Assembly: GCF_039654945.1 (NCBI RefSeq)
Contig: NW_027361732.1
Coordinates: forward strand, 12,090,001-12,154,000
DNA length: 64,000 nucleotides
Direction: 5' to 3'
Origin: Dendrobates tinctorius
Lineage: Eukaryota
The translations under genes were made by a program, and so were the position numbers. How positions within the stretch are numbered: position 1 is the stretch's first letter; each line of letters starts with the position of its first letter. The notes under the pieces are model-generated. The model was not told where the DNA came from. It saw only the letters and a program-made list of their open reading frames with translations, and ran no database searches. Positions 1 through 22,757 of the stretch are shown piece after piece.

Positions 1-1442
1 TGAAAATGCCTAATCACACCGTGAATTTTTCAGTTGCAGAGACGTGCACTATACAAGCACCAGTATAGCTTACACTATACAGTGACTATATAGTGGTCAG
101 GTCCCAGGTGTACAATAGGCGGTCTGCAGAATATTATCCCCTGGTGAACTGATTAGATGCAGTCACAAGCAGAATACATAAGAATGAATTAGGATCTGTA
201 AGTGCTTGAAATACTTATTTTAGTAATTCTTGTGTCTGTCATAACCTAGAATACATCCTCTTAGAAGTTTAAATAGTTTACTTCTCTTCAAAGCATATAC
301 GTAGAAACATGCGTATTTACGTTTGAATACACACCAGTTGTCAATTAGTCTAGCGATAGATTGAGACTTTTCCTAACACTACTGACTGATGATGGCTTAT
401 ATTATGTGAAAAATTACTTAATTTAAATTACTAATTGACATCTGCAGTCAATAAGTCCCTGTGACTCCATGCACTGCTCTCTATTATGACAATAGCTCCG
501 TAGTTAAAATGTGGAAGAATAAATGCAGCAACTCACAGTTCTAAGTGAATATATTCCCTAAATAAATGTAAGTATAAAATGAATTTAGATTCCCAGACCA
601 TTGAATTAAATCAGTGCAAATACTAAATTCCAAAATTATTCAACCTATTGACAACATATGACATATATTTTCCGTCATATGTCATGTCCCTGACTTTGAT
701 GCTGGCTCCAATGCTGAGCCCGCTTCTTTCCCCTCACATGACAGCTAATTTAATCAGCCATCGTATGCCTTTAACCAGTCACGGCTGGGGGAGTGCTTCG
801 CTCGTAGCTGTTAACCTGTTAAATCCTGCTGTCAATCTCTGAAAGCAGGATTTAACATTCGCCGGCAAGGCGTGCGTTATTTTACGCTCCCATCGGCACA
901 CCTGTGACATAATCGTGGGGAGCCAGTGGGTTGTCATGACAGTTGGGGGTCTGCTAAAGACGTCTGTATCTATTATTACGATCATCCTGTGGATGCCGGC
1001 TCGAGTCCGGCGTTCAGAGGAGATTGTCATATCTGCTATACATACAGTCATATGTAAAAGTTTGGGCACCCCTATTAATGTTAACCTTTTTTCTTTATAA
1101 CAATTTTGGTTTTTGCAACAGCTATTTCAGTTTCATATATCTAATAACTGATGGACTCAGTTATATTTCTGGATTCAAATGAGGTTTATTGTACTAACAG
1201 AAAATGTGCAATCTGCATTTAAACAAAATTTGACCGGTGCAAAAGTATGGGCACCCTTATCATTTTCTTGATTTGAACACTCCTAACTACTTTTTACTGA
1301 CTTCCTGAAGCACTAAATTGGTTTTGTATCCTCATTAAGCTTTGAACTTCATAGCCAGGTGTATCAAATCATGAGAAAAGGTATTTAAAGTGGCCACTTG
1401 CAAGTAGTTCTCCTATTTGATTCTCCTATGAAGAGTGGCATC

Positions 1443-1976
1443 ATGGGCTCCTCAAAACAACTCTCAAATGATCTGAAAACAAAGATTATTCAACATAGCT
1501 TTTCAGGGGAAGGATACAAAAAGTTGTCTCAGAGATTTAACCTGTCAGTTTCCACTGTGAGGAACATAATAAGGAAATGGAAGAACACAGGTACAGTTCT
1601 TGTTAAGCCCAGAAGTGGCAGGCCAAGAAAAATATCAGAAAGGCAGAGAAGAAGAATGGTGAGAACAGTCAAGGACAATCCACAGACCACCTCCAAAGAC
1701 CTGCAGCATCATCTTGCTGCAGATGGTGTCACTGTGCATCGGTCAACAATACAGCGCACTTTGCACAAGGAGAAGCTGTATGGGAGAGTGATGCGAAAGA
1801 AGCCATTTCTGCAAGCACGCCACAAACAGAGTCGCCTGAGGTATGCAAAAGCACATTTGGACAAGCCAGTTACATTTTGGAAGAAGGTCCTGTGGACTGA
1901 TGAAACAAAGATTGAGTTGTTTGGTCATACAAAAAGGCGTTATGCATGCGCTGTATTGTTGACCGATGCACAGTGA
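1443..1976 (+). pseudogene. Truncated Tc1 transposase: paired-like HTH DNA-binding region through the first catalytic Asp
   Basis: MGSSKQLSNDLKTKII...GRPRKIS...KKPFL...VLWTDETKIELFG. The frame runs into the inverted arm and stops, so the rest of the DDE domain is missing. Confidence 0.9.
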
Positions 1977-2262
1977 CACCATCTGCAGCAAGATGATGCT
2001 GCAGGTCTTTGGAGGTGGTCTGTGGATTGTCCTTGACTGTTCTCACCATTCTTCTTCTCTGCCTTTCTGATATTTTTCTTGGCCTGCCACTTCTGGGCTT
2101 AACAAGAACTGTACCTGTGTTCTTCCATTTCCTAACTATGTTCCTCACAGTGGAAACTGACAGGTTAAATCTCTGAGACAACTTTTTGTATCTTTCCCCT
2201 GAAAAGCTATGTTGAATAATCTTTGTTTTCAGATCATTTGAGAGTTGATTTGAGGAGCCCAT
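1870..2262 (-). pseudogene. Inverted copy of the Tc1 transposase N-terminus (DNA-binding region only)
   Basis: The minus-strand ORF is nearly identical to the plus-strand N-terminus up to HRSTIQR. Confidence 0.85.
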
Positions 2263-5200
2263 GATGCCACTCTTTATAGGAGAATCAAATAGGAGAACTA
2301 CTTGCAAGTGGCCACTTTAAATACCTTTTCTCATGATTTGATATACCTGGCTATGAAGTTCAAAGCTCAATGAGGTTACAAAACCAATTTAGTGCTTCAG
2401 GAAGTCAGTAAAAAGTAGTTAGGAGTGTTCAAATCAAGAAAATGATAAGAGTGCCCATACTTTTGCACCGGTCAAATTTTGTTTAAATTCAGATTGCACA
2501 TTTTCTGTTAGTACAATAAACCTCATTTGAATCCAGAAATATAACTGAGTCCATCAGTTATTAGATATATGAAACTGAAATAGCTGTTGCAAAAACCAAA
2601 ATTGTTATAAAGAAAAAAGGTTAACATTAATAGGGGTGCCCAAACTTTTACATATGACTGTAGCAGTGCTGATGAATAGCACAGGCGATTATACTATCGC
2701 CTGTGCTATTCAAGTCGCTCTCGTTCAAAACTGTCCGCTCTATCAAAATATAAAATACATTAATCTGATCGGTAAATGGCATAACGAGAAAGAACATTTT
2801 CAATTACTGTTTTTTTGGTAACCACAACATTGGAATAAAATGCAATAAGAGGCGAACAAAACATCGGATCTACCCTAAAATGATATCAATAAAAATGTCA
2901 GCTCAGTGCGCAAAAAATAAGCTCCAGATCCCAAAAAATGAAAAGGTTACAGGACTCAAAAAGAAGTCGATAAAAGCAAAAACTTTTTTTCGTACAAATT
3001 TCTGATTTTATTTTTCACCACTTAGATGAAAAATAAACTATAAATGTTTGGTATCTGCATACTCGTACTGACCTGGAGAATCATATTGGCAGGTCAGTTT
3101 TACCATATAGTGAACATGGTAAATAAAAAACCCAGAAAACAATAGTGGATTCCCACTTTTTGCAATTTCACCGCACTTGGATTTTTTCTCTGTTATCTAG
3201 TACACTGTATAGTAAAAATCAACGGTGCCATTCAAAATTCCAACTTGTCCCGCATTAAAACAAGACATCTTATGGCTATATTGACGGAAAAATAGAAATA
3301 AATTATGACTCTTGGAAGAAGGGGGGGGAAATGGCCTTGGCTTGAAGGGGTTAAAACAGACCCTAAAATTGTTAGACCACACCTCAAAATATTTCACACT
3401 TCAAACTTAGCCTCCAAACCAGACAAGTAAATAAATTTGCAACATGCACCTAAATTCAGACCCAGACTTAGTAATGCACTCATAAGTCGCCCAAGGCTTT
3501 ATGAAGGACATACTACGGTCAGTAGCAGTGGCCATAGATATTGAGTCCATTACTTTTATAGTGTGGTCGTTAATATAGAAAGTCCTAGTCTCATAAAGGC
3601 CATCCATCCTCTGAAAAGAGCCACCCTGATCCGCTGATTAGGACAGGACCAGCTTCTGGAGGCTATCGTATGTTTTGTCTACATGCATTTTATCTACATG
3701 GTGGACCATGAAATAAATGGACTCCCAGAATCTGCCAGAGCAATAGCTCTTTTCTCTTGGCATCTCTCCACTATAATGTAAGGAATGTTGGAGAGTGATT
3801 ATCGTAATCTTTCAAGATATGCAGAAAGGGGTTTATTAGCAATAAATAACAAGAAGCGAGGTGTGAAGGATTTTATTATTGTTGGATTTCTGAAGTGGTT
3901 TTGCTAGTGGAATTATGCTTTAAGAGACTATTAAATATATCCTATTCAGAGAATGATACTTGCTTCAACGTGAATTATTAGTTATCTCAAGAATGTACCA
4001 TATTGTTCTGTAACTAGATAATGTAACTGAACCGGGGAACTAAGCCATCTATTCACATCAAGACATTCCAGTGAGGCTATCCAACCAAACAATGAGTAAA
4101 AACTGACCTCCTCAATAGTTTAAGGTTCAATGGAAGGTTCAAGAGGAGATGCTTTATTCATCACAGATTACATATGAAGGTATTTTAGGTATTCTGCCCT
4201 CTCTGAAAATAAGGGAATTCATGATAATGCTTTATTACTGAAAACATGTAAAACTAGATCCAGTTTGCTGAACAGCTTGTTTTCTAAAATGACCATTATT
4301 GACCCATCTCTATTCACTTTTTTCCATTCTACATGACAGCACCACGAGAGAGGGGATCCGCCCAATGAGGACAGGAAACCTTCAAGATAAAATGGGCGGC
4401 TCCTCTCTCCGCATCAGTTGGTTTCCTGTCCTCGATGGGAAACCCTCAAGATGAAAACCTCTTGAAGATTCTGGAAGAAAGAAGAGGATGCCTGGGCCTT
4501 GGTCGGGTGATTACTGGCAGGCACCGGTCTGCTACACCCGTCACCAGGTACCGGTAGTCGCCTCGGGGGCCATATATTCCTATGCCCCCCCTGAGCGAGT
4601 GCATGGCCACAGCCTGTGAGGCAATTGCCCAGGTGAAGTTTGATGCCTCGGAGACCACATTGGGTGCACCTTCCCAGATGCCGACATACCCCATAGAAGT
4701 CCACGGAGGCCACTTTTGTGCTCCCTCTCTGTTGACGTGTGGTGGTCATGCAGCCCGTGAGGCACATCGGTGCACGGGCAGAGGTAAGACTCCTCGGAGG
4801 ACCCTCTCGGAATCCCTCCTTGTTGAGCCCAGGACGCCGGTCACCATTTGGGCCATAAAGAGTACCTGCAGGAATCAGTTTTGGCCAGCGGTGTGATCGC
4901 TCCCTCCAGGTAAAACCCAGCACAGGTATGGAGGAGGTGGAGGTGACCTGGCGTCTTGGTAGCCAGTGGTGGTGCAGCGTTATCGCCCCCTCCGGGCAGG
5001 TCCAGGTAGGGAGGGGGCGGTGGTGCCGGGTGTCATGGTGGCCGGGCGACAGAAGAACGCCGGGGGGCGCGCACCGGAAGTGACACGGGCGCGCACCGGA
5101 ACTGACGCGCCCGATAGTGGCAGGACAGAGACGCGCACCAGGAACTGGCCGGAAAGGCTCCCCGAGTGTAGAAAGGGAGCGCGCACCCGAGGGAAAGGCT

Positions 5201-5339
5201 GGCGCGCTCCGGGGTATGCACGGGGAGGAGATCAGCACACACCAGTAGTGGTTACTGGGGGTGCAAACAAGTCGGATGTAGTGCGCAGGTGACCGGCATG
5301 TGCAGGATCAACCAGGTGATCAGTTAATTAAAAAAAAAA

Positions 5340-5800
5340 AAAAAACTCCCCAGATAGATTCCTGGAGGACAATCATAATTCTGGAAAGACCTCAATAGGT
5401 ATCTAATAATCCCATCTTCCAAGATGGAGACGATAAGGCCAGCAGTAGAACTCCTCCTTCCTCAAATGTTATATAACAATTCCGAGACCTCAAGAATACT
5501 TATCACCAGATCCGGCAATAAGGCCATGTATGTCTCAGAGTGACAGTCCAGATGGGTCTCAGAAGCGTCACTTCCAATACAGGGCCCTGCCCTGTGGAGT
5601 AGTGATAGCCCTCAAGTTTTTCACAAGGCTAATCGCAAAAATCACAACGCACCTCAGAGGGAAAGATACTCTGGTGATACCCTATCGGGACAACGTCTTA
5701 ATAGTGGGAAGAGATCTTCCTTACTGTCAGGATCAAGTCAGAATAGTGATGAAAACACTATAGACGCTAGGATGGCAGCTGGACCTCAAAAAAAAAAAAA
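5340..5800 (+). pseudogene. DIRS reverse transcriptase remnant
   Basis: KMETI, DLKNTYHQI, HFQYRALPCG...KFFTRL and degenerate YLDD (PYRDNVLI); frameshifted. Confidence 0.75.
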
Positions 5801-6134
5801 AAAAATGGAACCAGCAATGATCTAGAAATTCTTGAGGTTAACAGTGGACTCGGTGGAGCAGGAGTATCACCTCCCAGAGGAAGACAAGGGAGATAAAAAA
5901 AAAAAAAAAAGGCAGAAATAGTTCTGAGAAGGACCATGTTGATGTTGGGGTCCCTCACCTCTGACATACCAGCAGTGAAATGGCCTAGTTCCACACAAGG
6001 GAACGGTAAGGGTGTGTGATACAGAACAACCGGGAACTTCAGGAACGGTTAGAGCAAAAGCTCACCCTCCTGGACTCTGTACTCCAGTCACTCAGGTGGT
6101 GGTTACAGATAGCCCTCCCCGAGAGGAGTACCCT

Positions 6135-6169
<35 letters not shown>

Positions 6170-6689
6170 CTCCAAGGTGGTCACAATGGGCGCTAGTACT
6201 TGGGGATGGGGCGCCAACCTAGGCCACCGGCCCTTCTTGGATGAGCGTGACTGCTTCCAAAAGTAAACACATTATGGCTCCAGGATCCCTGGGCCCAGGA
6301 GGAAAGAAATCTATCCTCCAACAATTGAGAACTAACAATAGAAAAAAGTCAGAGGAGTTGTTACCACACTTAAAGAGGACACCACGTGAGAGTCCTATCA
6401 GACAACCAAGCGGTGGTTGCATATGTAAACCACCAGGGAGACACCCGTCCTCAGTCCTTGATGCAGATAGTCACCGGCCCTTTTTAGGCTGAAGGTGACT
6501 GCTATTGTCAAAGGGCCTCCACTAAGCAGCTTGAGACTAGATCATGACTCTGGCAGAACACCAGTCCCTCTCATTACCGGCCCTGCATATCCGAAGTATA
6601 GACAACCTGAAGGCAGACTGTCTGAGCAGGAACCACTTGAGGCAAGGAGAAGGGTACCAAAAAGAATCCATTTCTCAATGGATAGTGCA

Positions 6690-6930
6690 CATTTGGGAAA
6701 ACCCAGTATAGATCTCTCCACCTCAAAAAAGCCAACAGGGAGGTTCAGAAATTCTGCGCCCTAAGTCCAGCAGACAGACCATGGACAGTAGACACCTTCA
6801 GGATAATGTGGACATCAGGTCTCCTGTACGCCTTCCCTCCAATATGCCTCATACCAGTGGTTTTGAGGAAGATCAGGGAGGTCAGAGCCAGAGTGTTCAT
6901 AATAGCTCCCTTTTTGGCCAAAAAGAGTGA
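6690..6930 (+). pseudogene. DIRS methyltransferase-like domain remnant
   Basis: PSIDLSTSKK and LYAFPPICLIPVVLRKI...FIIAP motifs, typical of the domain downstream of DIRS RNase H. Confidence 0.65.
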
Positions 6931-6999
6931 TATCAGTAACAGAGGTCTAGGACCTTCCAACACAGCGTCCCTTCAATCACCCTCAGGGATCCAGGCTGC

Positions 7000-8035
7000 A
7001 GTTGACAACCTGAAATTTAGAAGGTCGCTACTAGAGGAAAAGGGATTCTCAGCAGCGTTAATATCTACCTTACTCAGTAGCAGAAAACTAGTGACTACAA
7101 AAATTTTTAAGAGGATATGTAAAAAATTCTTATCTCCTCAGACCCAATACGGGAAGGGAAAGTCCCGATAGGGGCAATACTGGAATTTCTGCAGAAAGGT
7201 TTAGGATTGGGGTTAGCTGTCAGTACCCTCAAAGTACACGTCTCAGCCCTGGCAGCCTTATTCAACTGCGACCAGGCAAACAATAGGTGGGTGGCCAGGT
7301 TTATCCAGGCCTGTACTAAAGCTGACTCTGTCACGTCCTCTACTCCTCCTACTCCTCCTTGGGATCTAAATTTACTCCTGTCATCTCGGACAGAGTCTGT
7401 TTGAACCATCAAAACACAACATTAGCTAAGGATTCTAACATTAAACAGCCTTATTAATGGCACGCACGTCGGCCAGTAGGTTGAGCATTCACTCGCATTA
7501 TCAATAAGACCCTCCCTACACTCAGGCCATAGACGATAGAGTTGTGTTAAAATTAGATCCAGCATACCTTCCCAAGGTGATGTCAAAATATCATAGGGCT
7601 CAGGAGATAATCTTATCATCTATTTTGTCATGATACTAACTACCAGAAGGAGGAGAGGCTTCATTGCCTAGATATGAGACGATGTCTCCTGCAGTATTTA
7701 GAGGTAACGAGTCCTTGGAGAATACAGAGGTCCTTATTTGTCTCATTCCAAGGGGCAAGGAAGAGCCTTAAAAGCCTCTAAACAGACTATAGCTAGATGA
7801 GTGAAAAAGGCCATTATGCTAACATATAGCAGTGTAGGCAGGGCTATTCCAGAAGGTATAAAGCCCACTCCACGAGGGCCATGATGACGCCCGGGATGGA
7901 GAGAGCAGACGCTCCCATAGACCAAACCTGTGAGGCGGCCTCTTGGTCCGCTCCGGCATTATAGGTTAAACCTATTTGCTACCTCTGATCTCACATTTGG
8001 GAGAAGAGTGTTACAAGCAGTGATCCCTCCCTAAG
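7000..8035 (+). pseudogene. DIRS tyrosine recombinase remnant
   Basis: LEFLQKG, LAVSTLKVHVSAL, PPWDLNLLL, ASKQTIAR*VKKAI and an HSTR-containing segment near 7866; multiple stops and frameshifts. Confidence 0.75.
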
Positions 8036-8531
8036 AGAATACAAATCTCTGTAACTCTCTCGTGGTGCCGTCATGTAGAATGGAAAAACACGGGTATTAC
8101 ATACCTGGTAATGTGTTTTTTCATGAGACATGACGGCACCCTTATATTCCCTCCCTATTGATCACATCATTAGTTGGGTGCATTATTAGCATTATACACT
8201 CCCTTGGGTGTCAGAAATTTAGTAGTGTAAAGGATGTATTATTTATATGTACACTAACCTGCGTAATTCCTCTCGTGCTCTGTAAAACAACTGATGCGGA
8301 GAGAGGAGCCGCCCCTTTTATCTTGAAGGTTTCCTGTCCTCATTGGGCGGATCCCCTCTCTCGTGGTGCCGTCATGTCTCATGAAAAAACACATTACCAG
8401 GTATGTAATACCCGTGTTTTCACATATTTGAACTGGAATGCTGCCTATTTCATGATTTTAGTCGGCGTCATGCTGCTTGCACCAATAATCCAGTATTGCC
8501 TTTGTTCTTCACAACACACACAAATATAAAT

Positions 8532-8576
8532 ATTATATATATATATATATATATACTGTATATATATATATATATG
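8532..8576. repeat. (TA)n microsatellite
   Basis: Read directly. Confidence 0.9.
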
Positions 8577-9359
8577 TAAATGTATTTATTTTCTGTTATA
8601 TTTTTGTGCCCAGAGGTGTTTTTGATGCCATTGGAGTTTTATAAGAGCAGTAAGACTGCACATGTTTGGACCAAAACGCATTGCCTGTGTGAACGCTACT
8701 TAGTGCCTATCGGAGTGCATGAATCCACAAGTCTAGTCTTCTGTGGTATCAGATCTGCTGCCATTCGTGAATACCATTGTCAAGAACGGGGGTATACTTT
8801 ATCTGCACCAATGTTTAACAAGGTGGTATATAAAAAAGTATTGTCTACGTAAATGCCAGGACCAAGGTTTCCCAGCAGAATATTGCCATGCTGTTCATCA
8901 GACCTGGCCATCGGCTTCCATCGTTCCAGGGTACAGTTTTTTGTTGGTACTTCTGATGGAGGATAGGAGTCGGTATAGGCATTCTGACGGGTTTCCGGAT
9001 TTGCAGCTCCCATGCGCTGCAAGCTGTTTGGCACTGTGTGTTCTAATTCTGTCATTTCTACTACAGTAGCTGTTTTGTAGAATCAACCCTAATGGGCTAG
9101 CCTTCACTTGCAGTTGACCATCTGACGAGGAGCTTGGCATTACTTTAGTCTGATGAGACAACTCAAACCATAACTGAATGGAGAGTGAACCAACCCTTCT
9201 ATCTTCAGAAACCACGCTCTATTTTAGGTTTAGTACCCAATTGGTTGTAGGGAGGAGATTTTTTTTTATCAGTTGTGCATGGTCACGTAATTTTTTATTT
9301 GCTGCATATTATGGTCTCTATTAAGTGGTTCACAGGAATATTGATAGTACAACAAATGA

Positions 9360-9920
9360 ATAAAAAGGCCAATAGCATGTTTACTATCAGGATAATTTAT
9401 AATCCAAAATGTCTGTAAGAAGAAACTCCATATCCTGAATAATCATAATAAAGAAAAAAGGAGTGCTGACTACATCAAAATAATGCAAATTTATTGGTTA
9501 CATATAGTGGTTCAGTATGACACAGTACAAAACAGGAGGTAAAAAAGAAAAATTCATGTAGTCACCCAGGGAATAATAAGCTTGGTAAAAAGTGCTATTG
9601 ATCGTACTCAATAAATACAAAGGAATAAAGTCTCATGCCTAAACTGTAGATTAGATATTAGGTTCATGAGGATCTCACTGAATAAAGTAAACTAGTGCAG
9701 TATCGTAAACTGAAGCTCACAGGCACATTAATGAATTAGCTGCAACTAATTAATTAAACCAAAATGATGAAGTTAAAGCCAGCAAAGTAATAAAGTGCAA
9801 AGTGCATGTGCCACAGAATTAGGATCAATAACACTTACCCATAGTCATATACGAGTGCACGATACAGTTCCCAGTTGACAGCCCCGGACGCTCGTTTCGC
9901 GTTAGCTTTTTCAACAGGGA
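9360..9920 (-). mobile_element. Probable Penelope-like element terminal fragment
   Basis: The minus strand has a degenerate hammerhead-like core (TTGAAAAAGC-TAAC-GCGAAACG) near 9885-9918, a GTAAGT donor-like motif and a downstream AATAAA. No ORF. Confidence 0.35.
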
Positions 9921-9994
9921 TCGTGGTCTCTGGCATAGGAGAACTACATAACGTATCTACTCCACACTCAGGACAGCTCTGCCAGTGTCATATA

Positions 9995-10828
9995 GGGAGC
10001 GAGAAAAAAAGTCAAAACACTAGAATTACTTTTTTTTGGTCGCCGCGACATTGCATTAAAATATCAGGCGATCAAAATATCGTATCTGCACCAAAGTGAT
10101 ATCATTAAAAACGTCATCCCGGCATGCAAAAAATAAGCCCTCACCCAACTCAAGATCACATAAAATGGAGACGCTACGGGTATCGGAAAATGGCGCAATG
10201 TTTTTTTTTTTAAATTAGCTGAAGTTTTTTATCACCACTTAAGTAAAAAAAAACAAAACCTAGACATGTTTGGTGTCTAAGAACTCATAATGACTTGGAG
10301 AATCATAATGGCATGTCAGTTTTAACAATTTAGTGAACCTGGTAAAAAAGCACTTTTTTTTTTTTTTTGCAATTTCAACACACATGGTATTTTTTTCTGT
10401 TCTCCAGTCCAAGATATATTAAAACCAATCGTGTTGTTCAAAAGTACAACTCGTCCTGCAAAAAAACAAGCCCCATATGGCCATATTGACAGAAAAAATA
10501 AAAAAGTTATGGCTCTGGGAAGAAGGGGAGCTAAGAACGAAAATGCAAAAACAAAAATCCCTCCGGTAGTGATGAGCAATCGGGTGACCTCCGAGTATTT
10601 CGGCATGCTCGGAGATTTAGTTTCTGTCACCATAGCTGCATGATTTGTGGCTGCTAGACAGTCTGAATACTTGTGGGGATTTCCTAACAAACAGGCGTAA
10701 TCAGGCTGGCTAGCAGCCGCAAATCACGCAGCTACGGTGACAGAAACTAAATCTCCGAACACAACCAAATACTCGGAAATCTCAAGTAATGTGTATTCTC
10801 GCTTCACTAACCTCCGGTCATGAAGGGG
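9995..10828. mobile_element. Right portion of a piggyBac-type non-autonomous element (same family as 2700-3350)
   Basis: Aligns by eye with 2780-3350; ends AAGGGG|TTAA. Confidence 0.65.
10567..10809. mobile_element. hAT-type MITE nested in the piggyBac-type element
   Basis: TAGTGATGAGC...GCTTCACTA termini; 8-bp TSD CCCTCCGG/ACCTCCGG (7/8 match). Confidence 0.8.
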
Positions 10829-10951
10829 TTAAGTGTACCTGCGATAAAAATTACAGACATCTCCATTCTTTGCAGGTGGGAGAGTTTGAAAAATCGTCAG
10901 TGTATGAAATACGTATTCTCTCCATTGTGAGTGTGTATGTATATGTGTGTG

Positions 10952-11665
10952 TGTCACGGTCCAATTCTTGGATCCAGAGTCTGGGTTCCCTCATGAAAAC
11001 CTTTATTTTCAGGCTTCTGGGGGCTTGATATGGGCTTTTGCCCCCGGTGGCCACAAGTGTCATTACATCTGATACTTTCTTTAGTTTACCTTTTGCCCCT
11101 GGAGGTCAGTGGGTTAGAGCAGCTTTTGGCCCCTGATCATTTGACCATTCCCTTTTCCTATATAGGGTCACATGGTCTATGTGCAGGTGTTGGTAATAGC
11201 AGCATTTTCCTTTTGGAGGCAAACCACAGTGTAGTGAGCAGCTGGCTCTGAGGTGAAGAGCCACTACTGAAACTGGTGTGAACTCTGACTGCCCGGTGTC
11301 CGCAGCAGAGTTAGATGTTGAAGGTGGCAGCTGGCTCTTAGGTGTTGAGCCACTGTGAAAAGTTTTTCCGGTGATTCACTCTGCTGCCTGATGACTGCAG
11401 CAGAGCAAGATAAGTGTTGTGGTGTTTTTCCCTTTTTCCTTTGGGTGTTGTGCAGTACACTTTATTCCCTGTCTCACCACCTGAGGAGGGGGTTGGTGGT
11501 TTAGCTCAGGGCTAAACAGGAGATAGGGACAGGTCGGGGACTTGGGCCTCACTACCTTCAAGTGTACCCCCAAGTTAAGGAAAGTCAAGGCACCTCCTTA
11601 GCCTGAGGGGCAGTTCAGGGGCCCAGGTTCCACGTCTCCTGCTTTGTCCCAACTGCCCCGTGACA
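10952..11665 (+). mobile_element. LTR 1 of a Ty3/Gypsy (Tf1/sushi-like) element
   Basis: TGTCACGG...CCGTGACA termini; TATA-like box at 11159; near-identical to 12826-13545. Confidence 0.92.
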
Positions 11666-11700
11666 TTATTACCAACCGACCCATTTTTTCCTGGTGCGCC

Positions 11701-12165
11701 ATGGCCCTAATGCAGACCTGTCTCCAATTGCTGCAGACCCTCACTGAGGAGCATGGGGTGCTGCGTGGTGTGGTGGAGCAGCAGCTGCAGCAGTGGGAGG
11801 AGTACGGGGCCTCAGCTCAGATGCCGGCTCCACCTGAGCCCAAGTTGCCTCTCCCTGACAGGTTTTCTGGAGGGAGAGAGAATTTTTTGTTTTTTCAGGA
11901 GACCTGCAAGCTACACTTCAGGCTCCGCCCTCATTCATTAGGGAGTGAGGAACAGCGGGTGGGATTCATTATAGCCCTCCTTAAAGGTGATCCCCAATCC
12001 TGGGCCTTCTCCCTGCCGACCGATTCACCATCTCTACGGTCGGTGGACGAGTTTTTTGCAGCTTTGGCGAATAAGCCCCCTGTGGTCTCTGCCAGGGAGC
12101 AGGACTTGCTCATAGACGCGGACGCACCCAGGCAGGTCCCCATGGTGCTGTCTGGGGTTCCCTGA
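11701..12165 (+). pseudogene. Truncated sushi/PEG10/RTL-like Gag
   Basis: PEPKLPLPDRFSG...CKLHFRLRP...EEQRVGFIIALLKGDPQSWAF, typical of the sushi-type capsid N-terminal region. Confidence 0.8.
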
Positions 12166-12825
12166 GGTGAAGGGGTATGTCCCTGTAGTGAGCACACTGG
12201 TGATATGGTCCGCGGGGCTCACGCCGAAAATTCTTTACCATCTATGAAGCCGCCCCCTCCTGGTCGTATGGAGGAAGACGACCAAGGAGCGTATATTTTC
12301 TCCATATCCCCGTCCCCTTCTCCTCCAGTAATGGCAGCAGGGGTGCTGCCAGGGAGTAGGGGTAAGTCGCAACCCTCACCACAAGCTGCCCCTCTGAGTC
12401 GGAGTCCTCTTTTGAGCGGGGGGGCAGAGAGGAGAGTTTGCCTCTGAGCCTTGTGGGGGTGTGAGTGTTACGACACGGGGGGACACCTCTGTTGTCGGTG
12501 CTGTGAGGAGTTCACCATCTAGTGGCAAGAGAGTGAATGGCAATAAACGTTCAGGTCCGGACCTGGGTGCGTACGTGTTTGCATGGGTGTCTGAGTTATC
12601 CTTTGTTATACCCAGGCCTAGCTCGTTCCCCAGGTTGGCGCTCTGGAGATTTGTGGTGCCTCCAGAGTATACGTCTTCGCCTCCATCTACCCTCTCTAGC
12701 CATGACCCGGAGTGCCAGATGATGGTTGAAGTGAACTCTCATGGAACAAGGCGTCCGCACTATAGGTGTTATGCAGTGTAATACGGTGTTGAGGGTCCAG
12801 AGGCCTCTCATTGAAGGAGGGGTAC

Positions 12826-13545
12826 TGTCACGGTCCAATTCTTGGATCCGTGTCAGAGTCTGGGTTCCCTCATGAAAATTTTTATTTTCAGGCTTCTGGG
12901 GGCATGATACGGGTTTTTGCCCCCGGTGGCCACAAGTGTCATTATATCTGATACTGTCTTTAGTTTACCTTTTGCCCCCGGTGGTCAGTGGGGTTATAGC
13001 AGCTTTTGGCCCCTGATCATTTGACCATTCCCTATTCCTATATAGGATCACATGGTCTATGAGCAGGTGTTGGTAACAGCAGCATTTTCCTTTTGGAGGC
13101 GAACCACAGTGTAGTGAGCAGCGGGCTCTGAGGTGAAGAGCCACTGCTGAAACTGGTGTGAACTCTGACTGCCTGGTGTCTGCAGCAGAGTTAGATGGTG
13201 AAGGTGGCAGCTGGCTCTTAGGTGTTGAGCCACTGCGAAAAGTTTTTCCGGTGATTCACTCTGCTGCCTGATGACTGCAGCAGAGCAAGATAAGTGTTTT
13301 GGTGTTTTTCCCTTTTTCCTTTGGGTGTTGTGCAGTACACTTTATTCTCTGTCTCACCTCCTGGGGAGGGGGTTGGTGGTTTAGCTCAGGGCTAAACAGG
13401 AGATAGGGACAGGTCGGGGACTTGGGCCTCACTACCTTCAAGTGTACCCCCAAGTTAAGGAAAGTCAGGGCACCTCCTTAGCCTGAGGGGCAGTTCAGGG
13501 GCCCAGGTTCCACGTCTCCTGCTTTGTCCCAACTGCCCCGTGACA
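12826..13545 (+). mobile_element. LTR 2 of the same element, followed by a second, truncated internal region (13546-13703)
   Basis: Preceded by polypurine tract GAAGGAGGGG. Followed again by TTATTACCAAC and the gag start, which is cut off at a (TA)n tract. Confidence 0.92.
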
Positions 13546-13702
13546 TTATTACCAACCGACCCATTTTTTCCTGGTGCGCCATGGCCCTAATGCAGACCTG
13601 TCTCCAATTTCTGCAGACCCTCACTGAGGAGCGTGGGGTGCTACGTGGCGTGGTGGAGCAGCAGCTGCAGCAGTGGGAGGAGTACGGGGCCTCAGCTCAG
13701 AT

Positions 13703-13707
<5 letters not shown>

Positions 13708-13758
<51 letters not shown>
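13708..13758. repeat. (TA)n microsatellite
   Basis: Read directly; a second mixed TA/TATG tract lies at about 14189-14268. Confidence 0.9.
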
Positions 13759-13760
<2 letters not shown>

Positions 13761-13799
13761 TGTATGTATATTCTGTATGTGTATATACAAATACATACA

Positions 13800-14190
13800 C
13801 AAAAGTCATGGTGCACTTTTGATCAGTCACTGGAAATCAACAAAAGACGATAGAAATGTGAAATCTGCTCCAAATAAAAGAAAAACTCTCCCAGTTTCAT
13901 ACCTCTTCGGTGCAGTTCAATGTGGGCTCCGTTTGTTGCCCTGCACACATCCAAACAACAGTGAAGCTCTTGCCACACACGGGTAAGAACATCTGCTGTA
14001 ACAGAGTGAATAACATCTGTGATTCTCTGTTTTAAGTGATTAATGTTGTTGATACGTTCAGAAGACACTGAACTTTCCTCTCTGCCGTCCACATCTCCTT
14101 TTATTTGGTGCAGATTTCCACATTTTCTAACGTCTTCTGTTGCTTTCCTGTGACTGGTCAAAAGTTCACCATGACTTTACGGACACACTG
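13800..14190 (-). mobile_element. Internally deleted mariner-superfamily element (DD41D/DD37D-like)
   Basis: ~80-bp imperfect TIRs (AAAGTCATGGTG...CCAAATAAAAG). The minus strand encodes a transposase C-terminus, HLKQRITDVIHSVTADVLTRVWQEL...CRATNGAHIE. Confidence 0.7.
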
Positions 14191-14214
14191 TATGTATGTA
14201 TGTATGTGTGTGTG

Positions 14215-14253
<39 letters not shown>

Positions 14254-14270
14254 ATATATATATATATGCA

Positions 14271-15300
14271 CAGCTCTGGCAAAAATTAAGAGACCACTGC
14301 ACAGTTTTATAAAAATCAGCTTCTCTACATGTCTGACAGCCATTCCATTCCACTGTCAGTTGAATTCCAACCAGAGTACACCTCAATCTTCTTAATGCGC
14401 CTCTGATTAGGTGATCACCTGAACCAAATCTTGTGATCCATAAGGATTGGACCATAGAGGACTGGAGTAAGGTAATCTTCTCTGATGAGTCTAATTTTCA
14501 GCTTTGCCCAAAACCTGGTCATCTAATGGTCAGGAGGAGACCTGGAGAGGCATACAAGCCATAGTCTCTTGCACCGACTTTGAAATTTGGTGGAGGATTG
14601 ATGATGATCTGGGGATGCTCCAGCAAGCCTGGAATTAGGCAAGTTAATCTTTGCGACGAACGTATGACTCAAGCCGTATACAAGGTTATCCTGGAAAAAC
14701 GGTTGATTCCTTCTGCTTAGGCAATGTTTCCCAACTCTGAGGACTGGTTTTAACAGCAGGACAATGCGCCATGCCACACAGCTAGGTCAATCAATGTGTG
14801 TATGAAGGACCTTCACATCAAATCCCTGTCATGGCCAGCCCAATCTCCAGACCTGAACCCCATTGAAAACCTCTGGAATGTAATCAAGAGGAAGATGGAT
14901 AGTCACAAGCCATCATACGAAGAACTGCTTACATTTTTGTACCAAGAGTGGCGCAAGGTCACCCAAAAGCAGTGTGAATGAAAGGACTGGTGGAAAGCAT
15001 GCCAAGACACATGAAAACTGTGATTAAAAATCATGGTTATTCCACAAAATATTCATTTCTGAACTCTTCCTGAGTTAAAACATTAGTATTGTTGTTTCTA
15101 AATGATTGTGAACTTGTTTTCTTAGCATTATTTGAGGTCTGCAAGCACTGCATTTTTTTGTTCGTTTGACCATTTCTCATTTTCTGAAAATAAATACAAA
15201 ATTTATTGCTTGGAGATTCGGAGACAAGTTGTCACTAGTTTATAGAATAAAAGAGCAATTTACATTTTACTCAAAGATATACCTATAAAGTGAAAAATCA
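14271..15300 (+). mobile_element. Deleted Tc1 element retaining catalytic-domain remnants
   Basis: Starts CAGCTCTGGCAAAAATTAAGAGACCAC; WSKVIFSDESNF, QDNAPCH and WPAQSPDLNPIENLW motifs with stops. Confidence 0.85.
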
Positions 15301-15479
15301 AAGTGAAAATTACTGAAAAAAAATTAAGACTTAAACTGTAATGCATCATTTATCTAAATGTCCACTTTGTAAATGTAAAAGTATATTGTAAGCAAAGAAA
15401 TTGGTGAGAGAGATTTTTTTGGAGAAAATGATTTTGAATACCATTTTATTTTAGATACAAAGTTTTATTCCAAAAAGTA

Positions 15480-16288
15480 CAGATAGTCCTCGGGTTACGA
15501 ATTAGATTCGTTCTGAAGCCAAATATGTATGTATGGTAAGTTGGAACAGGGTTGAGAATAAAAACAAATACTCACCGCTGACCACTCTGTCTGCCCCACT
15601 GCTCACCACCCGCCATCCAATCATCTTTTCACACTGTCATGCGCCACATCCCCAGTCTCTTCACTGTAGACCACAGACTTATGACAGCATTCACGCCTCG
15701 GAGGTTACTGCACTTCTTACGGTTATGACGTCAACGATGGAAAGAAAAGGGTCAGATGTCAGGTGGCAAGCAGCAGAGTAGCCGTAGAGGTGAGCTTTAA
15801 GTTTTTTTTCTGAACCAATATTCACCTCTGCAGCCACCTAGCTATTCACTGGTCCTCTTTTTACCATCATCGGGCATGCTGCATCTCCAGCCTATTTATT
15901 ATAAACCAGGATACTATGTTTCATAAGGTTACAATGATGATGCAACCTTATGACATAAAGTGAGCTCCAGGTTGCACTCGGTCATAAGTTTTGGTCTTTA
16001 TTGAAGAAGCCGGAGTTGCGATGCACAAAAATGGAAAGCATGGAACCGGATTTAATCTTCAGGGTTTAATCTTCAGCAGCGCACTATTTCCCTGCCTCTC
16101 TGCTTCCTGTTTGCTGGAGGAGAATGCTCCTGAAGATTGACAGCTCATCCCAGAGGCATAGTTTTGCCACTTGTCCAAATCGTGCCAGAGAGGTCAGCAG
16201 TGGGGTGAGTATATTAGGTTGAATTTGGAACATCGTAACCAGGGGTCGTACGTAAGTTGGATGTTCGTAATTTGAGGATGGGTATTTG
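15480..16288. mobile_element. Degenerate pogo/Tigger-like non-autonomous element
   Basis: TA|CAGATAGTCCTCGGGTTACG left end, with a degenerate inverted end near 16265-16288. Confidence 0.45.
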
Positions 16289-19982: not shown

Positions 19983-22757
19983 CATAGAATCATAGAATCG
20001 TAGAGTTGGAAGGGACCTCCTGGGCCATCTGGTCCAACCCCCTGCTCAAAGCAGGATTCGCTAAATCATCCCAGTCAGATGTCTGTCCAGCCTCTGTTTG
20101 AAGACTTCCATTGAAGGAGAACTCACCACTTCTCGTGGCAGCCTGTTCCACTCATTGATCACTCTAACTGTCAAAAAGTTTTTTCTAATATCTAATCTGT
20201 GTCTCTTCCCATTCAGTTTCATCCCATTGCTTCTAGTCTTTCCTTGTGCAAATGAGAATAAAGTTGATCCTTCTACAATGTGACAGCCCTTTAGATATTT
20301 GTAGACAGCTATTAAGTCTCCTCTCAGTCTTCTCTTTTGCAAACTAAACATTCCCAAATCCTGCAACCTTTCCTCATAAGACAGGGTTTGCAGACCGGTC
20401 ACCATTCTGGTCGCTCTTTTCTGAACTTGCTCCAGTTTGTTGATGTCTTTTTTAAAATGTGGTGCCCAAAACTGGACACAATATTCCAGATGAGGTCTGA
20501 CCAAAGAGGAGTAGAGGGAAATAATGACTTCACGTGATCTAGACTGTATGCTTCTGTTAATACATCCTAGAATTGCATTTGCCTTTTTTGCTGCTGCATC
20601 ACACTGTTGACTCATATTCAGTCTGTGATCTATTAGTATACCCAAGTCTTTTTCACATGTGCTGTCACTTAGCCCTATTCCTCCCATTCTATATATGCTT
20701 TTTTCATTTTTATTGCCCAGATGTAGTACTTTGCATTTCTCCCTGTTAAAAACCATTCTGTTAGTTGCTGCCCACTTCTCCAGTTTATTTAAATCTTTTT
20801 GAATCCTCTCTCTCTCTTCTCTAGTATTAGCTATCCCTCCTAGCTTTGTGTCATCAGCAAATTTAATCAGTTTACCCTCAATTCCTTCATCTAAATCGTT
20901 GATAAAGATGTTGAACAATACAGGGCCCAGGACAGAGCCCTGTGGTACCCCACTTGAGACATTCTTCCAACTGGATGTGCAGCCATTTACGACCACTCTT
21001 TGGGTCCGATTACTAAGCCAGTTATGAATCCACCTAACAGTTGCCTTGTCCATTCCATACTTAGTCATTTTTTCAATAAGGATTGTATGAGAGACTGTCA
21101 AATGCTTTGCTGAAGTCAAGATATACTATATCTACAGCATTTCCTTGATCCACCCAATCAGTGATACCGTCATAGAAGGAAATTAAGTTAGTCTGACATG
21201 ACTTATTAGTTAGAAACCCATGCTGACTCTGTTTAATCACTTCATTCTTATCCAGGTATTGACATACATGTTGTTTAATAATTTGTTCAAAGATCTTTCC
21301 TGGTATAGAAGTCAGACTCACCGGCCTATAGTTGCCTGGGTCCACCTTCTTCCCCTTTTTGAAGATAGGAACAACATTTGCTCTTCTCCAGTCTTCTGGC
21401 ACTTTTCCTGTTCTCCAAGAATTTTCAAAGATTATGGAGAGGGGTTCAAAAATTTCTTCTGCTATCTCCTTCAGTACTCTGGGGTGTAATTCATCTGGAC
21501 CTGGAGACTTGAATTCATTTAGGTTAGCTAAGTGTTTCCTCACTATCTTTCTGTTTATAGATATCCTGGATTCTTCTATTCCCATAATAGGACAGTGAAT
21601 AACAGTTGATGTTGCATTTCCTTTCTGAGAGAAAACAGATGCAAAATAGGAATTTAAAAGTTCAGCCTTCTCAACATTCTGTCTTACCATTTCATCATTT
21701 TCATCCTGTAAAAATCCTATAGCATCTTTGACTTTTCTTTTACTTTTGACATATCCCCAAAATCCTTTATTATTGCTTTTGACATCTCTTGCAAGCCTCA
21801 GATCATTTTCAGCTTTAGATAATCTGAATTGTGCCCTGCAGGTTCTGCAGACAGCATTATATTCTTCTTTAGATATGCCTCCCTCTTTCCATTTTATAAA
21901 CATTTTTTTCTTCCTTTTTAGCATGTGCTTAAGTTCTGTGTTCATCCATCCTGGTTTCCTTAAATGCTTCCTATTCTTCCCTCTTTTCGGAATTGTTAAC
22001 AACTGTGCTTTGAGAATTTCATTTTTCAAGATTTCCCATCCTTCCTGGACATTTTTGTCTTTAAGGATATCCAGCCATTGGATCCCTCCAATTCTCTTTC
22101 TGAATCCCTTAAAATCTGCCTTTCTGAAATCTAACCTTGACGTCTGAGTCTTCACAGGTCTTCCACCTCTAGTTATCCAAAATTCTAAAATAGCATGGTC
22201 GCTACCTCCTAGGGTCCCAGCCACTTTTACCTCCTCAACCATTTCCTCCCTGTTTATAAGGATTAGATCCAAGGTAGCAGTTCCCCTTGTTTTCTCCCTT
22301 ACCTTTTGGAAGATAAAGTTGTCAGCAAGAGAGGATAAGAATTTCCTTGACCTGTTAGTTTTGCCTGAGAGAGATTCCCAACAAATGTCTGGATAGTTGA
22401 AATCTCCCATGACAACTATGTCATATTTTTTGGAGAACTTGGCCATCTGATGCATAAAGAGTTCATCTATATCTTCGGCTTGCACAGGCGGCCTGTAGTA
22501 AATGCCTACAATGGTGTCCTTTCCATTGTTCTGTCCTTGTATTCTTACCCAAACAGTTTCCACAGAACTCCCAGTCTCTGAAGCTTCAATCTCTGTGCAG
22601 ATATACGCGTTTCGAACATACAATGCGACACCCCCTCCTCGTTTATCAAGTCTGTTTCTTGCAAATAAGTTGTATCCTTCTAGTCTTGTATTCCAATCAT
22701 GTGTATTGTCCCACCAAGTTTCAGTGATTCCAATTACATCATATTTCTTTTCCTGTG
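19983..22757 (-). mobile_element. 5'-truncated CR1 LINE
   Basis: (ATTCTATG)n 3' tail. ORF2 has APE endonuclease motifs (ETW, GDFN, SDH) and RT motifs (QGSVLGP, FADD), split by one frameshift near 21100. Confidence 0.95.
20061..22740 (-). pseudogene. CR1 ORF2 (endonuclease-RT), frameshifted at DFSKAFD/VSH
   Basis: ORFs 21073-22623 and 20061-21119 overlap at the frameshift. Confidence 0.9.

What the first reader, a model, noticed from the sequence alone, without database searches (positions are those of the whole stretch)
1045..2660. Tc1 foldback with two left ends: a candidate Mu-killer-like silencer or repressor locus
Seen: two ~714-bp inverted arms (about 10 mismatches by manual count) around a 188-bp spacer, bounded by one TA duplication. 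Each arm holds the left IR/DR, the 5' UTR and the transposase DNA-binding coding region; the catalytic domain is lost. The total, 1616 bp, is close to normal Tc1 size. Known: maize Mu killer is an inverted duplication of MuDR that makes hairpin RNA and silences its family. Inferred: read-through in the host intron or convergent promoters could give a long hairpin RNA (endo-siRNA or ADAR substrate), the open 178-codon frame could encode a binding-only repressor, and the unit may still be mobile in trans.
Basis: partly seen in the sequence, partly recalled or inferred. Interest (0 to 1): 0.72.

Follow-up and report, generated by a model that had tools for sequence, protein, structure and literature searches.

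The report
Fold-back Tc1 transposon, two left halves
A defective Tc1 "jumping gene" in a frog genome is built from two mirror-image copies of its own front half. The structure is real, but it is a known kind of repair accident, the scan has noted look-alike copies elsewhere in this genome, and its proposed self-silencing role remains untested.

Summary
Arms 1043-1758 and 1947-2662 are 716 nt with their TA flanks and differ at 10 positions (98.6% identical). They enclose a 188-nt spacer, and the element (1045-2660) is 1616 bp.

- **Structure:** each arm carries the outer and inner direct repeats of a Sleeping-Beauty-type (IR/DR) Tc1 end, the 5' UTR and the paired-like DNA-binding coding region. 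The spacer continues the left copy up to just past the first catalytic Asp. The DDE domain is otherwise absent.
- **Junction:** the two copies overlap by 2 nt (TG). This fits abortive gap repair with template switching or snap-back synthesis.
- **Parent family:** summed contig depth in the element is 2-5x10^5, against about 9 for the contigs that cover the flanks alone, so the family is very abundant.
- **Found before by this scan:** notes record fold-backs of 1614-1616 bp, several described with 714-bp arms, on at least five other pieces of this genome. That points to a family mobilised in trans. I could not test this here.
- **Function:** there is no evidence for silencing or repressor activity. 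The open frame is expected by chance (P about 0.83), the arms differ by 3 nonsynonymous and 1 synonymous change, no RNA or small-RNA data bear on the locus, and no host exon was found.

Verdict: a real but ordinary non-autonomous fold-back Tc1. The Mu-killer analogy is structural only.

The parts
1043..1044 (.). Left TA of the target-site duplication
   Evidence: TA directly abuts the CAGT... terminus. Complementarity between the arms ends just outside it.
1045..1758 (+). Left arm: left IR/DR end, 5' UTR and the first 105 codons of the transposase
   Evidence: 714 nt, with 10 mismatches to the right arm.
1053..1075 (+). Outer direct repeat (putative transposase binding site), left arm
   Evidence: family D1: 23 nt, 87% identical to the inner copy 185 nt downstream. 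This is the IR/DR layout.
1238..1260 (+). Inner direct repeat, left arm
   Evidence: family D1. Contigs that match up to 1255 and then carry other sequence are read here as right ends of full-length copies, which puts the end of the family's terminal inverted repeat near 1255 (table 7).
1382..1388 (+). TATA-like motif about 55 nt upstream of the ATG (possible internal promoter; inferred only)
   Evidence: motif scan.
1443..1976 (+). 177-codon ORF: PAI+RED paired-like DNA-binding domain, linker with basic residues, and the start of the catalytic domain including the first Asp (WTDET). The last 9 residues are read from the antisense of the other arm.
   Evidence: Homology to Tc1 transposases ends at residue 168.
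1759..1946 (+). 188-nt spacer: unique continuation of the left copy's coding sequence
   Evidence: The ORF runs through it, and contigs of full-length family members continue past 1948 (table 7).
1947..1948 (.). Junction with 2-nt (TG) overlap between the forward copy and the inverted copy
   Evidence: The forward copy matches full-length contigs up to 1948, where contigs carry a different, consistent continuation behind 1948 in X1, X5 and X15. The inverted arm starts at 1947.
1947..2660 (-). Right arm: inverted second copy of the left end (IR/DR, 5' UTR, first 105 codons)
2445..2467 (-). Inner direct repeat, right arm. It has one substitution (2450) in the GGGCACCC core shared by the other three repeats.
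2630..2652 (-). Outer direct repeat, right arm
   Evidence: pair I2.
1870..2262 (-). 130-codon ORF of the right arm from the canonical ATG: DNA-binding domain up to mid-RED, then a 25-residue tail read from the antisense of the spacer
   Evidence: HTH_SB E 7.9e-14; HTH_Tnp_Tc3_2 partial, profile positions 1-38 of 72.
2515..2520 (+). AATAAA on the + strand. Its mirror image lies at 1190-1185 on the - strand. Transcripts starting inside either arm would cross most of the opposite arm before reaching it.
2661..2662 (.). Right TA of the target-site duplication

Best explanation
This is a non-autonomous fold-back derivative of a very abundant Sleeping-Beauty-type (IR/DR) Tc1 family of a frog genome.

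**Origin (inferred).** During repair of a double-strand gap in or at a Tc1 copy, a nascent strand had copied the left end up to element position 904. It then either switched template or snapped back on itself at a 2-nt microhomology, and copied positions 714 to 1 in the opposite sense. The result has two left ends, keeps all four transposase-binding repeats and is 1616 bp long, against about 1640 bp for the full-length element.

**Spread (inferred).** Because the ends are complete and the natural spacing between them is kept, transposase from autonomous copies could cut and paste it. This copy most likely arrived at its TA site that way, and its arms have since accumulated 10 differences.

**Function.** It encodes no catalytic domain. 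Any transcript through it must fold into a hairpin of about 700 bp, and its 177-codon frame would give a protein that only binds DNA. Both are by-products of the structure, with no sign of selection or use.
For: - **Structure, TA duplication and IR/DR repeats:**
- **Coding content:** DNA-binding domains are present and the DDE domain is absent. Homology to Tc1 transposases stops at residue 168.
- **Junction:** contigs from three runs (X1, X5, X15) match the window up to 1948 and then carry the same different continuation, read as the full-length coding sequence. This defines the 2-nt overlap (table 7).
- **Full-length size:** an 882-nt contig of a run labelled RNA links a terminal repeat, about 520 nt of unmatched sequence, and 1848-1948 in reverse. 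That gives about 1.64 kb for a full-length relative (table 8).
- **Abundance:** summed contig depth is 2-5x10^5 in the element, against about 8-10 for contigs that cover the flanks alone. This agrees with 78,037 Tc1 copies reported in the strawberry poison frog (PMC6278860). Many different sequences abut the left tip (table 7).
- **Both borders:** each is bridged without mismatch by short-read contigs, 813-1064 and 2638-2768.
- **Common source of the arms:** both arms share the minority base A at 1389, where 85% of family depth has G. The arm differences at 1329, 1337 and 1569 are private to the left arm.
- **Precedent:** the Goblin element of the Aedes Tc1/mariner element Ozma has inversely duplicated subterminal sequence, explained by abortive gap repair with template switching and microhomology (PMC3814204).
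- **Spacing rule:** IR/DR elements are not mobilised as short MITEs and appear to need spacing between their ends (PMC5224488). A fold-back of natural length satisfies that.
- **Scan notes:** fold-backs of 1614-1616 bp are recorded on at least five other pieces of this genome.
Against: - The inner junction was not shown in independent reads here. All runs were contigs, and the listed pieces do not bridge 1946/1947.
- The multi-copy status of the fold-back, as opposed to the Tc1 family, rests only on unchecked scan notes.
- A 2-nt microhomology is weak evidence for any particular repair route.
- In organism A the left and right terminal repeats of the family are too alike to tell whether the outer 214 bp of the right arm is a copied left end or an original right end. 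Formation in place therefore cannot be excluded from this locus alone.
Confidence: 0.8

Rival explanations
1. Mu-killer-like silencer. The locus is transcribed by read-through or from the two facing 5' UTR promoters. The hairpin of about 700 bp is diced into endo-siRNAs, or feeds piRNA production, and silences the Tc1 family in trans.
For: [quoted passage not shown]
- A near-perfect hairpin is predicted on both strands.
- No AATAAA occurs before most of the opposite arm has been crossed.
- Fold-back of read-through Tc1 transcripts triggers RNAi in C. elegans, and Sleeping Beauty transposition rises when RNAi is suppressed (review PMC3878927).
- Frog intronic transposon remnants give small RNAs (PMC3875865).
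Against: - There is no evidence of transcription at this locus. The runs labelled or guessed as RNA have no contigs on the bins of lowest repeat depth in the flanks (700-776, 854-1007, 2933-3000), and their pieces on the element are those of full-length family members.
- No small-RNA data were available, and no host exon was found.
- With 10^4-10^5 copies in both orientations, sense-antisense and inverted-pair dsRNA of this family should exist anyway.
- From general knowledge, long nuclear dsRNA in vertebrates is more likely to be hyper-edited by ADAR than diced. Xenopus eggs and embryos are the classic source of that activity.
- The family remains extremely abundant, so it is not evidently silenced.
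Confidence: 0.07
2. Binding-only repressor. The 177-residue product (PAI+RED domain and basic linker, no catalytic core) is made and competes with transposase at the direct repeats or poisons its oligomers, like the KP protein of P elements or dominant-negative mariner transposases.
For: - The frame from the canonical ATG is intact, with complete HTH_SB and HTH_Tnp_Tc3_2 domains and a TATA-like motif upstream.
- The isolated N-terminal domain of Sleeping Beauty (N123) binds the direct repeats in vitro (PMC5224488).
- Dominant-negative complementation is documented for mariner (reviewed in PMC3878927).
Against: - An open frame is expected by chance: P = 0.83 at 0.7% divergence per arm.
- The two copies of the domain differ by K5N, G24R and I43V plus one synonymous change, close to the neutral ratio.
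- At position 1569 the left copy carries a private change away from the family consensus.
- No protein with the junction-derived tail turned up in the protein word search, which found only more distant Tc1 fragments from other organisms.
- Any decayed full-length copy with a stop after the DNA-binding domain would give the same kind of product.
Confidence: 0.04
3. Formed in place. A normal Tc1 inserted at this TA and its right two-fifths were later replaced by an inverted copy of its left part during repair. The fold-back never moved as a unit.
For: - Gap repair after excision, with the right 3' end re-invading a template's left end through terminal-repeat homology, would leave exact termini and the original TA duplication.
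- Nothing at this locus distinguishes the two histories. Searches showed no empty-site paralogue or joint.
Against: - Scan notes list fold-backs of the same or nearly the same length (1614-1616 bp), several described with 714-bp arms, on at least five other pieces of the genome. Independent accidents would not repeat the same two breakpoints. These notes are leads and were not verified here.
Confidence: 0.08
4. Assembly artefact: a chimeric or palindromic long read, or a mis-join of two Tc1 copies.
For: Inverted repeats are a known source of mis-assembly. The inner junction was not seen in the contig pieces listed.
Against: - The arms differ at 10 scattered positions, and the fold is asymmetric with a 188-nt one-sided spacer. 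Palindromic read artefacts are exact and symmetric.
- The termini are exact, with matching TA on both sides in non-palindromic flanks.
- Both outer borders are present without mismatch in short-read contigs.
- Look-alike structures of 1614-1616 bp are noted at other loci.
Confidence: 0.02

Closest known systems
Goblin, a derivative of the Tc1/mariner element Ozma in Aedes aegypti (PMC3814204)
   Same: It is a non-autonomous derivative whose terminal repeats were lengthened by inverse duplication of subterminal sequence of the autonomous parent. It has a junction with microhomology, is explained by abortive gap repair plus template switching, and was amplified in trans.
   Different: Goblin is a miniature element with 54-bp repeats and 6-bp microhomology, in a simple-IR lineage. 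Here the arms are 714 bp, include the coding sequence of the DNA-binding domain twice, the overlap is 2 nt, natural length is kept, and the parent is an IR/DR-type element in a vertebrate.
Fold-back Tc1-related elements of C. elegans (Tc7/CeleTc1 and others listed in PMC3814204; the Tc7 details are from memory: Rezsohazy et al. 1997)
   Same: They consist mostly of two long inverted arms around a unique centre, carry Tc1-type tips, use TA targets and are mobilised by Tc1 transposase.
   Different: In Tc7 only the outermost few dozen bp match Tc1 and the arms are non-coding. Here the whole arm is a recent copy of the parent's left 714 bp.
Maize Mu killer (PMC3440606)
   Same: It is a partial inverted duplication of a transposase gene's 5' part together with two copies of the adjoining terminal repeat, able to form a long hairpin RNA.
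   Different: Mu killer is a single locus, is shown to be transcribed from a flanking gene, yields siRNAs and heritably silences MuDR through plant RNA-directed DNA methylation. None of those steps is shown here. The pathway does not exist in that form in vertebrates, and this element appears to be a multi-copy mobile family.
Sleeping Beauty and other IR/DR Tc1 elements (PMC5224488)
   Same: It has a TA target, terminal repeats of about 214-230 bp each with an outer and an inner direct repeat, and a paired-like PAI+RED DNA-binding domain. The left end is the preferred end for transposase, and substrates with two identical left IRs are used experimentally.
   Different: It has no catalytic domain and no right-end internal sequence. 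IR/DR families are reported not to spawn short deletion derivatives, and this derivative keeps full length by duplication in place of deletion.
KP repressor of the Drosophila P element and dominant-negative mariner transposases (the latter reviewed in PMC3878927; KP from general knowledge)
   Same: A truncated transposase retains the DNA-binding part and lacks catalysis.
   Different: Those products are shown to be expressed and inhibitory, and KP spread under selection. Here neither expression nor constraint is seen.

Membership tests
Tc1/mariner superfamily, IR/DR (Sleeping-Beauty-like) subgroup | TA target-site duplication flanking CAGT-type termini | tested here: met
   TA at 1043-1044 and 2661-2662. 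The termini are CAGTCATATG... and its reverse complement.
Tc1/mariner superfamily, IR/DR (Sleeping-Beauty-like) subgroup | Long terminal repeats, each with two direct repeats (outer and inner transposase binding sites) | tested here: met
   23-nt repeats at 1053-1075 and 1238-1260, 87% alike and 185 nt apart, mirrored in the right arm. The end of the family's terminal repeat is inferred near 1255.
Tc1/mariner superfamily, IR/DR (Sleeping-Beauty-like) subgroup | Transposase with a paired-like N-terminal DNA-binding domain | tested here: met
   HTH_SB E 1.2e-16 and HTH_Tnp_Tc3_2 E 1.7e-23. The ORF is 72-89% identical to fish Tc1 transposase fragments.
Tc1/mariner superfamily, IR/DR (Sleeping-Beauty-like) subgroup | DDE catalytic domain (required for an autonomous member) | tested here: not met
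   There is no DDE_3 hit. Only about 45 residues of the domain, including the first Asp, remain in the left copy. It is therefore a non-autonomous derivative and not an autonomous member.
Fold-back derivative made by abortive gap repair with template switching | Subterminal sequence of the parent duplicated in inverse orientation, replacing the other end's internal sequence | tested here: met
   Positions 1-714 of the element recur inverted at 903-1616. The parent's continuation beyond position 904 is seen in contigs.
Fold-back derivative made by abortive gap repair with template switching | Microhomology or filler at the junction | tested here: inconclusive
   There is a 2-nt TG overlap and no filler. 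Two nucleotides would occur by chance in about 1 of 16 junctions.
Fold-back derivative made by abortive gap repair with template switching | Same junction at several loci with different flanks (a family amplified in trans) | not testable with these tools
   Only one copy is in the window. The junction is absent from metagenome and viral collections. Scan notes list at least five further copies of 1614-1616 bp, which I did not verify.
Mu-killer-like hairpin silencer | Inverted duplication of the 5' part of the transposase gene with its terminal repeat | tested here: met
Mu-killer-like hairpin silencer | Transcription through the inverted duplication, giving a hairpin RNA | tested here: inconclusive
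   The fold is certain if the locus is transcribed. The runs labelled or guessed as RNA (X15, X19) show no contigs on the flank bins of lowest repeat depth and none listed across the junction. Those runs are small, consist of contigs only, and one is from another organism.
Mu-killer-like hairpin silencer | Arm-derived small RNAs and heritable silencing of the autonomous element | not testable with these tools
   No small-RNA runs were offered. Genetic tests are needed.
DNA-binding-only transposase repressor (KP-like) | Frame kept open by selection and product expressed | tested here: inconclusive
   P(open by chance) is 0.83. The arm copies differ by 3 nonsynonymous and 1 synonymous change. 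No protein with the junction tail was found in the protein word search. The test has low power.

The most novel reading that the evidence does not exclude
The fold-back is a mobile family, a 'self-spreading hairpin'. Each insertion into a transcribed region produces a 700-bp dsRNA covering the Tc1 promoter, 5' UTR and DNA-binding-domain coding sequence. Collectively these copies seed siRNA or piRNA silencing, or ADAR hyper-editing, of the most abundant DNA transposon of a poison-frog genome. This would be an animal counterpart of Mu killer that, unlike Mu killer, propagates using the transposase it suppresses.
Probability: 0.07. Interest if true: 0.75.

Novelty: new member of a known kind. Interest (0 to 1): 0.3.

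Why it matters
As it stands, this is a well-preserved example of how cut-and-paste transposons rearrange during gap repair. It also bears on a rule proposed for IR/DR-type Tc1 elements, which are said not to spawn short deletion derivatives because their ends need spacing (PMC5224488). A fold-back that keeps natural length would get round that rule.

If the family were shown to feed small-RNA or editing pathways, it would give a testable vertebrate model for how a genome first recognises an invading DNA transposon. That question is open in frogs whose genomes are swollen by active Tc1 elements (PMC6278860, PMC11152451). Nothing found here shows that.

Tried and rejected
- **Other copies in the window:** blastn and tblastn of the left copy and the ORF found only the two arms. 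The junction 24-mer is unique even with 3 mismatches allowed.
- **Junction in public collections:** there were no matches in metagenome or viral contigs. Frog DNA is not expected there, so this says nothing.
- **Proteins with the junction tail:** the word search on residues 118-177 gave 52 Tc1 fragments of 49-85% identity, and the alignments inspected stop before the tail. The exact-protein look-up was blank. The collection evidently lacks this frog's Tc1 products, so absence is uninformative.
- **Read laying:** all runs were Logan contigs, so they gave no usable depth, starts, strands or small RNAs.
- **Empty-site paralogue:** the flanks match other window regions only at 69-76% and away from the insertion point. 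No clean 1044-to-2663 joint was listed.
- **Host gene:** Pfam scans of 20 long ORFs gave only LINE or retroviral reverse transcriptase and endonuclease domains, plus a low-complexity false hit to WBP-1. Rfam found nothing in 1-16000.
- **Scan notes by sequence:** the search with the junction was blank.
- **Assembly artefact:** considered and rejected for the reasons given under rivals.


Full report
**1. The observation**

The repeat finder reports a single large inverted pair, 1043-1758 and 1947-2662. It is 716 nt long, 99% complementary, with 188 nt between the arms. A base-by-base comparison gives exactly 10 mismatches. Complementarity ends immediately outside the TA dinucleotides at 1043-1044 and 2661-2662, and immediately inside at 1759 and 1946. 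The element between the TAs (1045-2660) is 1616 bp. An inverted repeat of this size cannot arise by chance, and no other copy or fragment of this element lies in the 64-kb window.

**2. What the arms contain**

- **Binding sites:** each arm starts with CAGT... next to the TA. It carries two 23-nt direct repeats 185 nt apart (1053-1075 and 1238-1260, 87% alike, mirrored at 2630-2652 and 2445-2467). This is the outer and inner binding-site layout of the IR/DR (Sleeping-Beauty-like) branch of Tc1 elements (PMC5224488).
- **Left ORF:** from the ATG at 1443 a 177-codon frame runs to 1976. Pfam finds the Sleeping Beauty HTH domain (residues 1-52, E 1.2e-16) and HTH_Tnp_Tc3_2 (residues 69-140, E 1.7e-23), and no DDE domain.
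- **Where homology ends:** pairwise comparison with fish Tc1 transposase fragments (72% and 89% identity) shows that homology ends at residue 168. That is shortly after the WTDET motif that holds the first catalytic Asp. The last nine residues are read from the antisense of the other arm.
- **Right ORF:** the right arm has its own open frame (130 codons from the ATG at 2262, minus strand), truncated inside the second HTH.

**3. The junction and the parent element**

The contigs of four public runs were laid on 700-3000. In three runs (X1, X5, X15) contigs match the window up to 1948 and then carry one consistent, different continuation (agreement 0.99-1.0). This is read as the normal coding sequence of full-length family members. 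The forward copy therefore extends to 1948 and the inverted copy begins at 1947, a 2-nt (TG) overlap with no filler.

An 882-nt contig of a run labelled RNA (X19, another organism, about 93% alike) joins three parts: a terminal repeat (1042-1255), about 520 nt not present in the window, and 1848-1948 in reverse orientation. This gives about 1.64 kb for a full-length relative and about 214 bp for its terminal repeat. The fold-back is thus element positions 1-904 followed by positions 714-1 inverted, and it has almost the natural length.

**4. How it most likely arose (inferred)**

Two routes give exactly this sequence.

- **Template switching:** during synthesis-dependent repair of the gap left by excision, the right-hand 3' end copies the terminal repeat. 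It then re-invades a template's left end through terminal-repeat homology and copies inward to position 714. It finally anneals with the strand coming from the left at the TG/CA microhomology.
- **Snap-back synthesis:** a nascent strand that had reached position 904 pairs its terminal TG with the CA at 1757-1758 and copies itself backwards.

Abortive gap repair with template switching and microhomology has been proposed for Goblin, a derivative of the Aedes Tc1/mariner element Ozma with inversely duplicated subterminal sequence. Fold-back Tc1-related elements are also listed for C. elegans (PMC3814204). Two nucleotides of overlap cannot discriminate between the routes.

**5. Family context**

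- **Depth:** in run X1, probably the sample behind the assembly, contigs that cover the flanks alone have depth 7.9-9.9. The summed depth over the element is 2-5x10^5. The tool warns that this is not a copy number. As an order of magnitude (10^4-10^5 copies at 90% identity or more) it agrees with the 78,037 copies reported for the commonest Tc1 family of the strawberry poison frog (PMC6278860), and with Tc1 making up 6.6% of the dyeing poison frog assembly (PMC11152451).
- **Spread across runs:** runs under seven further organism labels hold 13-48% of the stretch's words. This fits their holding the element and not the flanks.
- **Different flanks:** many different sequences abut the left tip (loose ends before 1037-1042, agreement 0.4-0.55).
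- **Direction of the arm differences:** at 1329, 1337 and 1569 the left arm carries private changes, while the other runs and the right arm have the family base. Both arms share the minority A at 1389, where 85% of the family depth in X1 has G. This is consistent with both arms descending from one source copy.

**6. Is the fold-back itself a family?**

I could not test this. Only one copy is in the window. The public collections I could scan do not hold frog DNA. The protein collection lacks this frog's Tc1 products. The single read-laying run returned contigs whose listed pieces bridge only the outer borders: 813-1064 and 2638-2768, both without mismatch.

The scan's own notes list fold-back Tc1 elements of 1614-1616 letters on at least five other pieces of the same genome, several described with 714-bp arms: s1-369568, s1-366875, s1-386095, s1-377011 and s1-382891. 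They also list a 1450-letter one (s1-377367). Follow-up agents judged those real, and in most cases inserted as a unit or part of a multi-copy family.

These are unverified leads. If they hold, the same two breakpoints recur at independent loci, so the rearrangement happened once and the product was then mobilised in trans. That is mechanistically reasonable. All four binding repeats are present, the left end is the preferred end of Sleeping Beauty transposase, and substrates with two identical left IRs are in experimental use (PMC5224488). The natural spacing that IR/DR elements seem to require is also kept: the same paper reports that they do not amplify short deletion derivatives. In this copy the right inner repeat has one substitution (2450) in the core shared by the other three repeats.

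**7. Function**

- **Hairpin:** a transcript of either strand must fold. 706 of 714 arm positions pair with their mirror partner, with dG -1349 and -1343 kcal/mol for the two strands against about -380 for shuffles. The only AATAAA signals lie far inside the opposite arm, at 2515 on the plus strand and 1190 on the minus strand. Transcripts started at the TATA-like motif (1382, and its mirror) would therefore include about 570 bp of duplex.
- **No evidence of transcription:** these are consequences of the structure and do not show use. The runs labelled or guessed as RNA gave no contigs on the flank bins of lowest repeat depth, and their pieces on the element are those of full-length copies. 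No small-RNA run was offered.
- **No host intron shown:** Pfam scans of 20 long ORFs found only LINE or retroviral domains, and Rfam found nothing. The 'host intron' is therefore unverified.
- **No constraint on the frame:** 5% of possible substitutions would create a stop. At 0.7% divergence per arm the frame stays open with probability 0.83. The two copies of the DNA-binding domain differ by K5N, G24R, I43V and one synonymous change, which is about the neutral ratio.
- **Not a special source:** with tens of thousands of family copies, inverted pairs and truncated frames that would produce dsRNA and binding-only proteins are likely to be common. This is an inference. Scan notes record inverted Tc1 pairs elsewhere.

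**8. Comparison with known systems**

- **Structure:** the element resembles Mu killer, a partial inverted duplication of mudrA with two TIRA copies (PMC3440606). It is also a large-scale analogue of Goblin and the nematode fold-back elements (PMC3814204).
- **Mu killer function:** the defining functional features of Mu killer are transcription into a hairpin, siRNAs and heritable silencing. None of them is shown here.
- **RNA pathways:** RNAi-type control of Tc1 and Sleeping Beauty (PMC3878927) and small RNAs from intronic transposon remnants in Xenopus (PMC3875865) make a small-RNA outcome conceivable. From general knowledge, ADAR hyper-editing is the more usual fate of long nuclear dsRNA in vertebrates.

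**9. Verdict**

The element is a new member of a known kind: a non-autonomous fold-back derivative of a Tc1/mariner element. It is unusual mainly for its 714-bp coding arms, its preserved length and its IR/DR parent. The scan had already found this element on other DNA of the same genome.

Noticed in passing
window 2673-2712, and the insertion site 1030-1044 with 2661-2670: Ten bases right of the element lies a 40-nt near-perfect palindrome (90% self-complementary). The reconstructed empty target site is itself nearly palindromic, with 7-nt arms around a 2-nt centre. The flank may belong to a small hairpin-forming repeat.
   Followed up: partly
window 777-853 and 2702-2932: Contig depth in these flank stretches is 5,000-13,600, against about 9 for the contigs that cover the flanks alone. 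817-857 is self-complementary (83%). 648-856 resembles 39111-39317 (72%), and 2802-3324 resembles 10024-10528 (69%). The fold-back therefore sits among other moderately repeated elements.
   Followed up: partly
window 20061-22623, minus strand: Two overlapping long ORFs carry endonuclease (Exo_endo_phos_2) and reverse-transcriptase domains. This is a LINE-type retrotransposon with a frameshift between the parts.
   Followed up: no
window 45175-46353, minus strand: A 392-aa ORF matches reverse transcriptase (RVT_1, E 7.6e-31) followed by a match to ALKBH8_N (E 4e-9). It lies inside the stretch another note calls a class III ERV with 'gutted pol', so it may be a separate insertion worth checking against that reading.
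   Followed up: no
run X19 laid on window 1042-1948: A metatranscriptomic RNA run labelled with a different organism holds contigs that together cover 1042-1948, about 93% alike. One of them is an 882-nt contig reading as the right part of a full-length relative. This indicates either expression or carried-over DNA of the family in another host or sample.
   Followed up: no
window 1045-2660: The element is strongly CpG-depleted, with 10 CpG observed against about 60 expected from its base composition.
   Followed up: no
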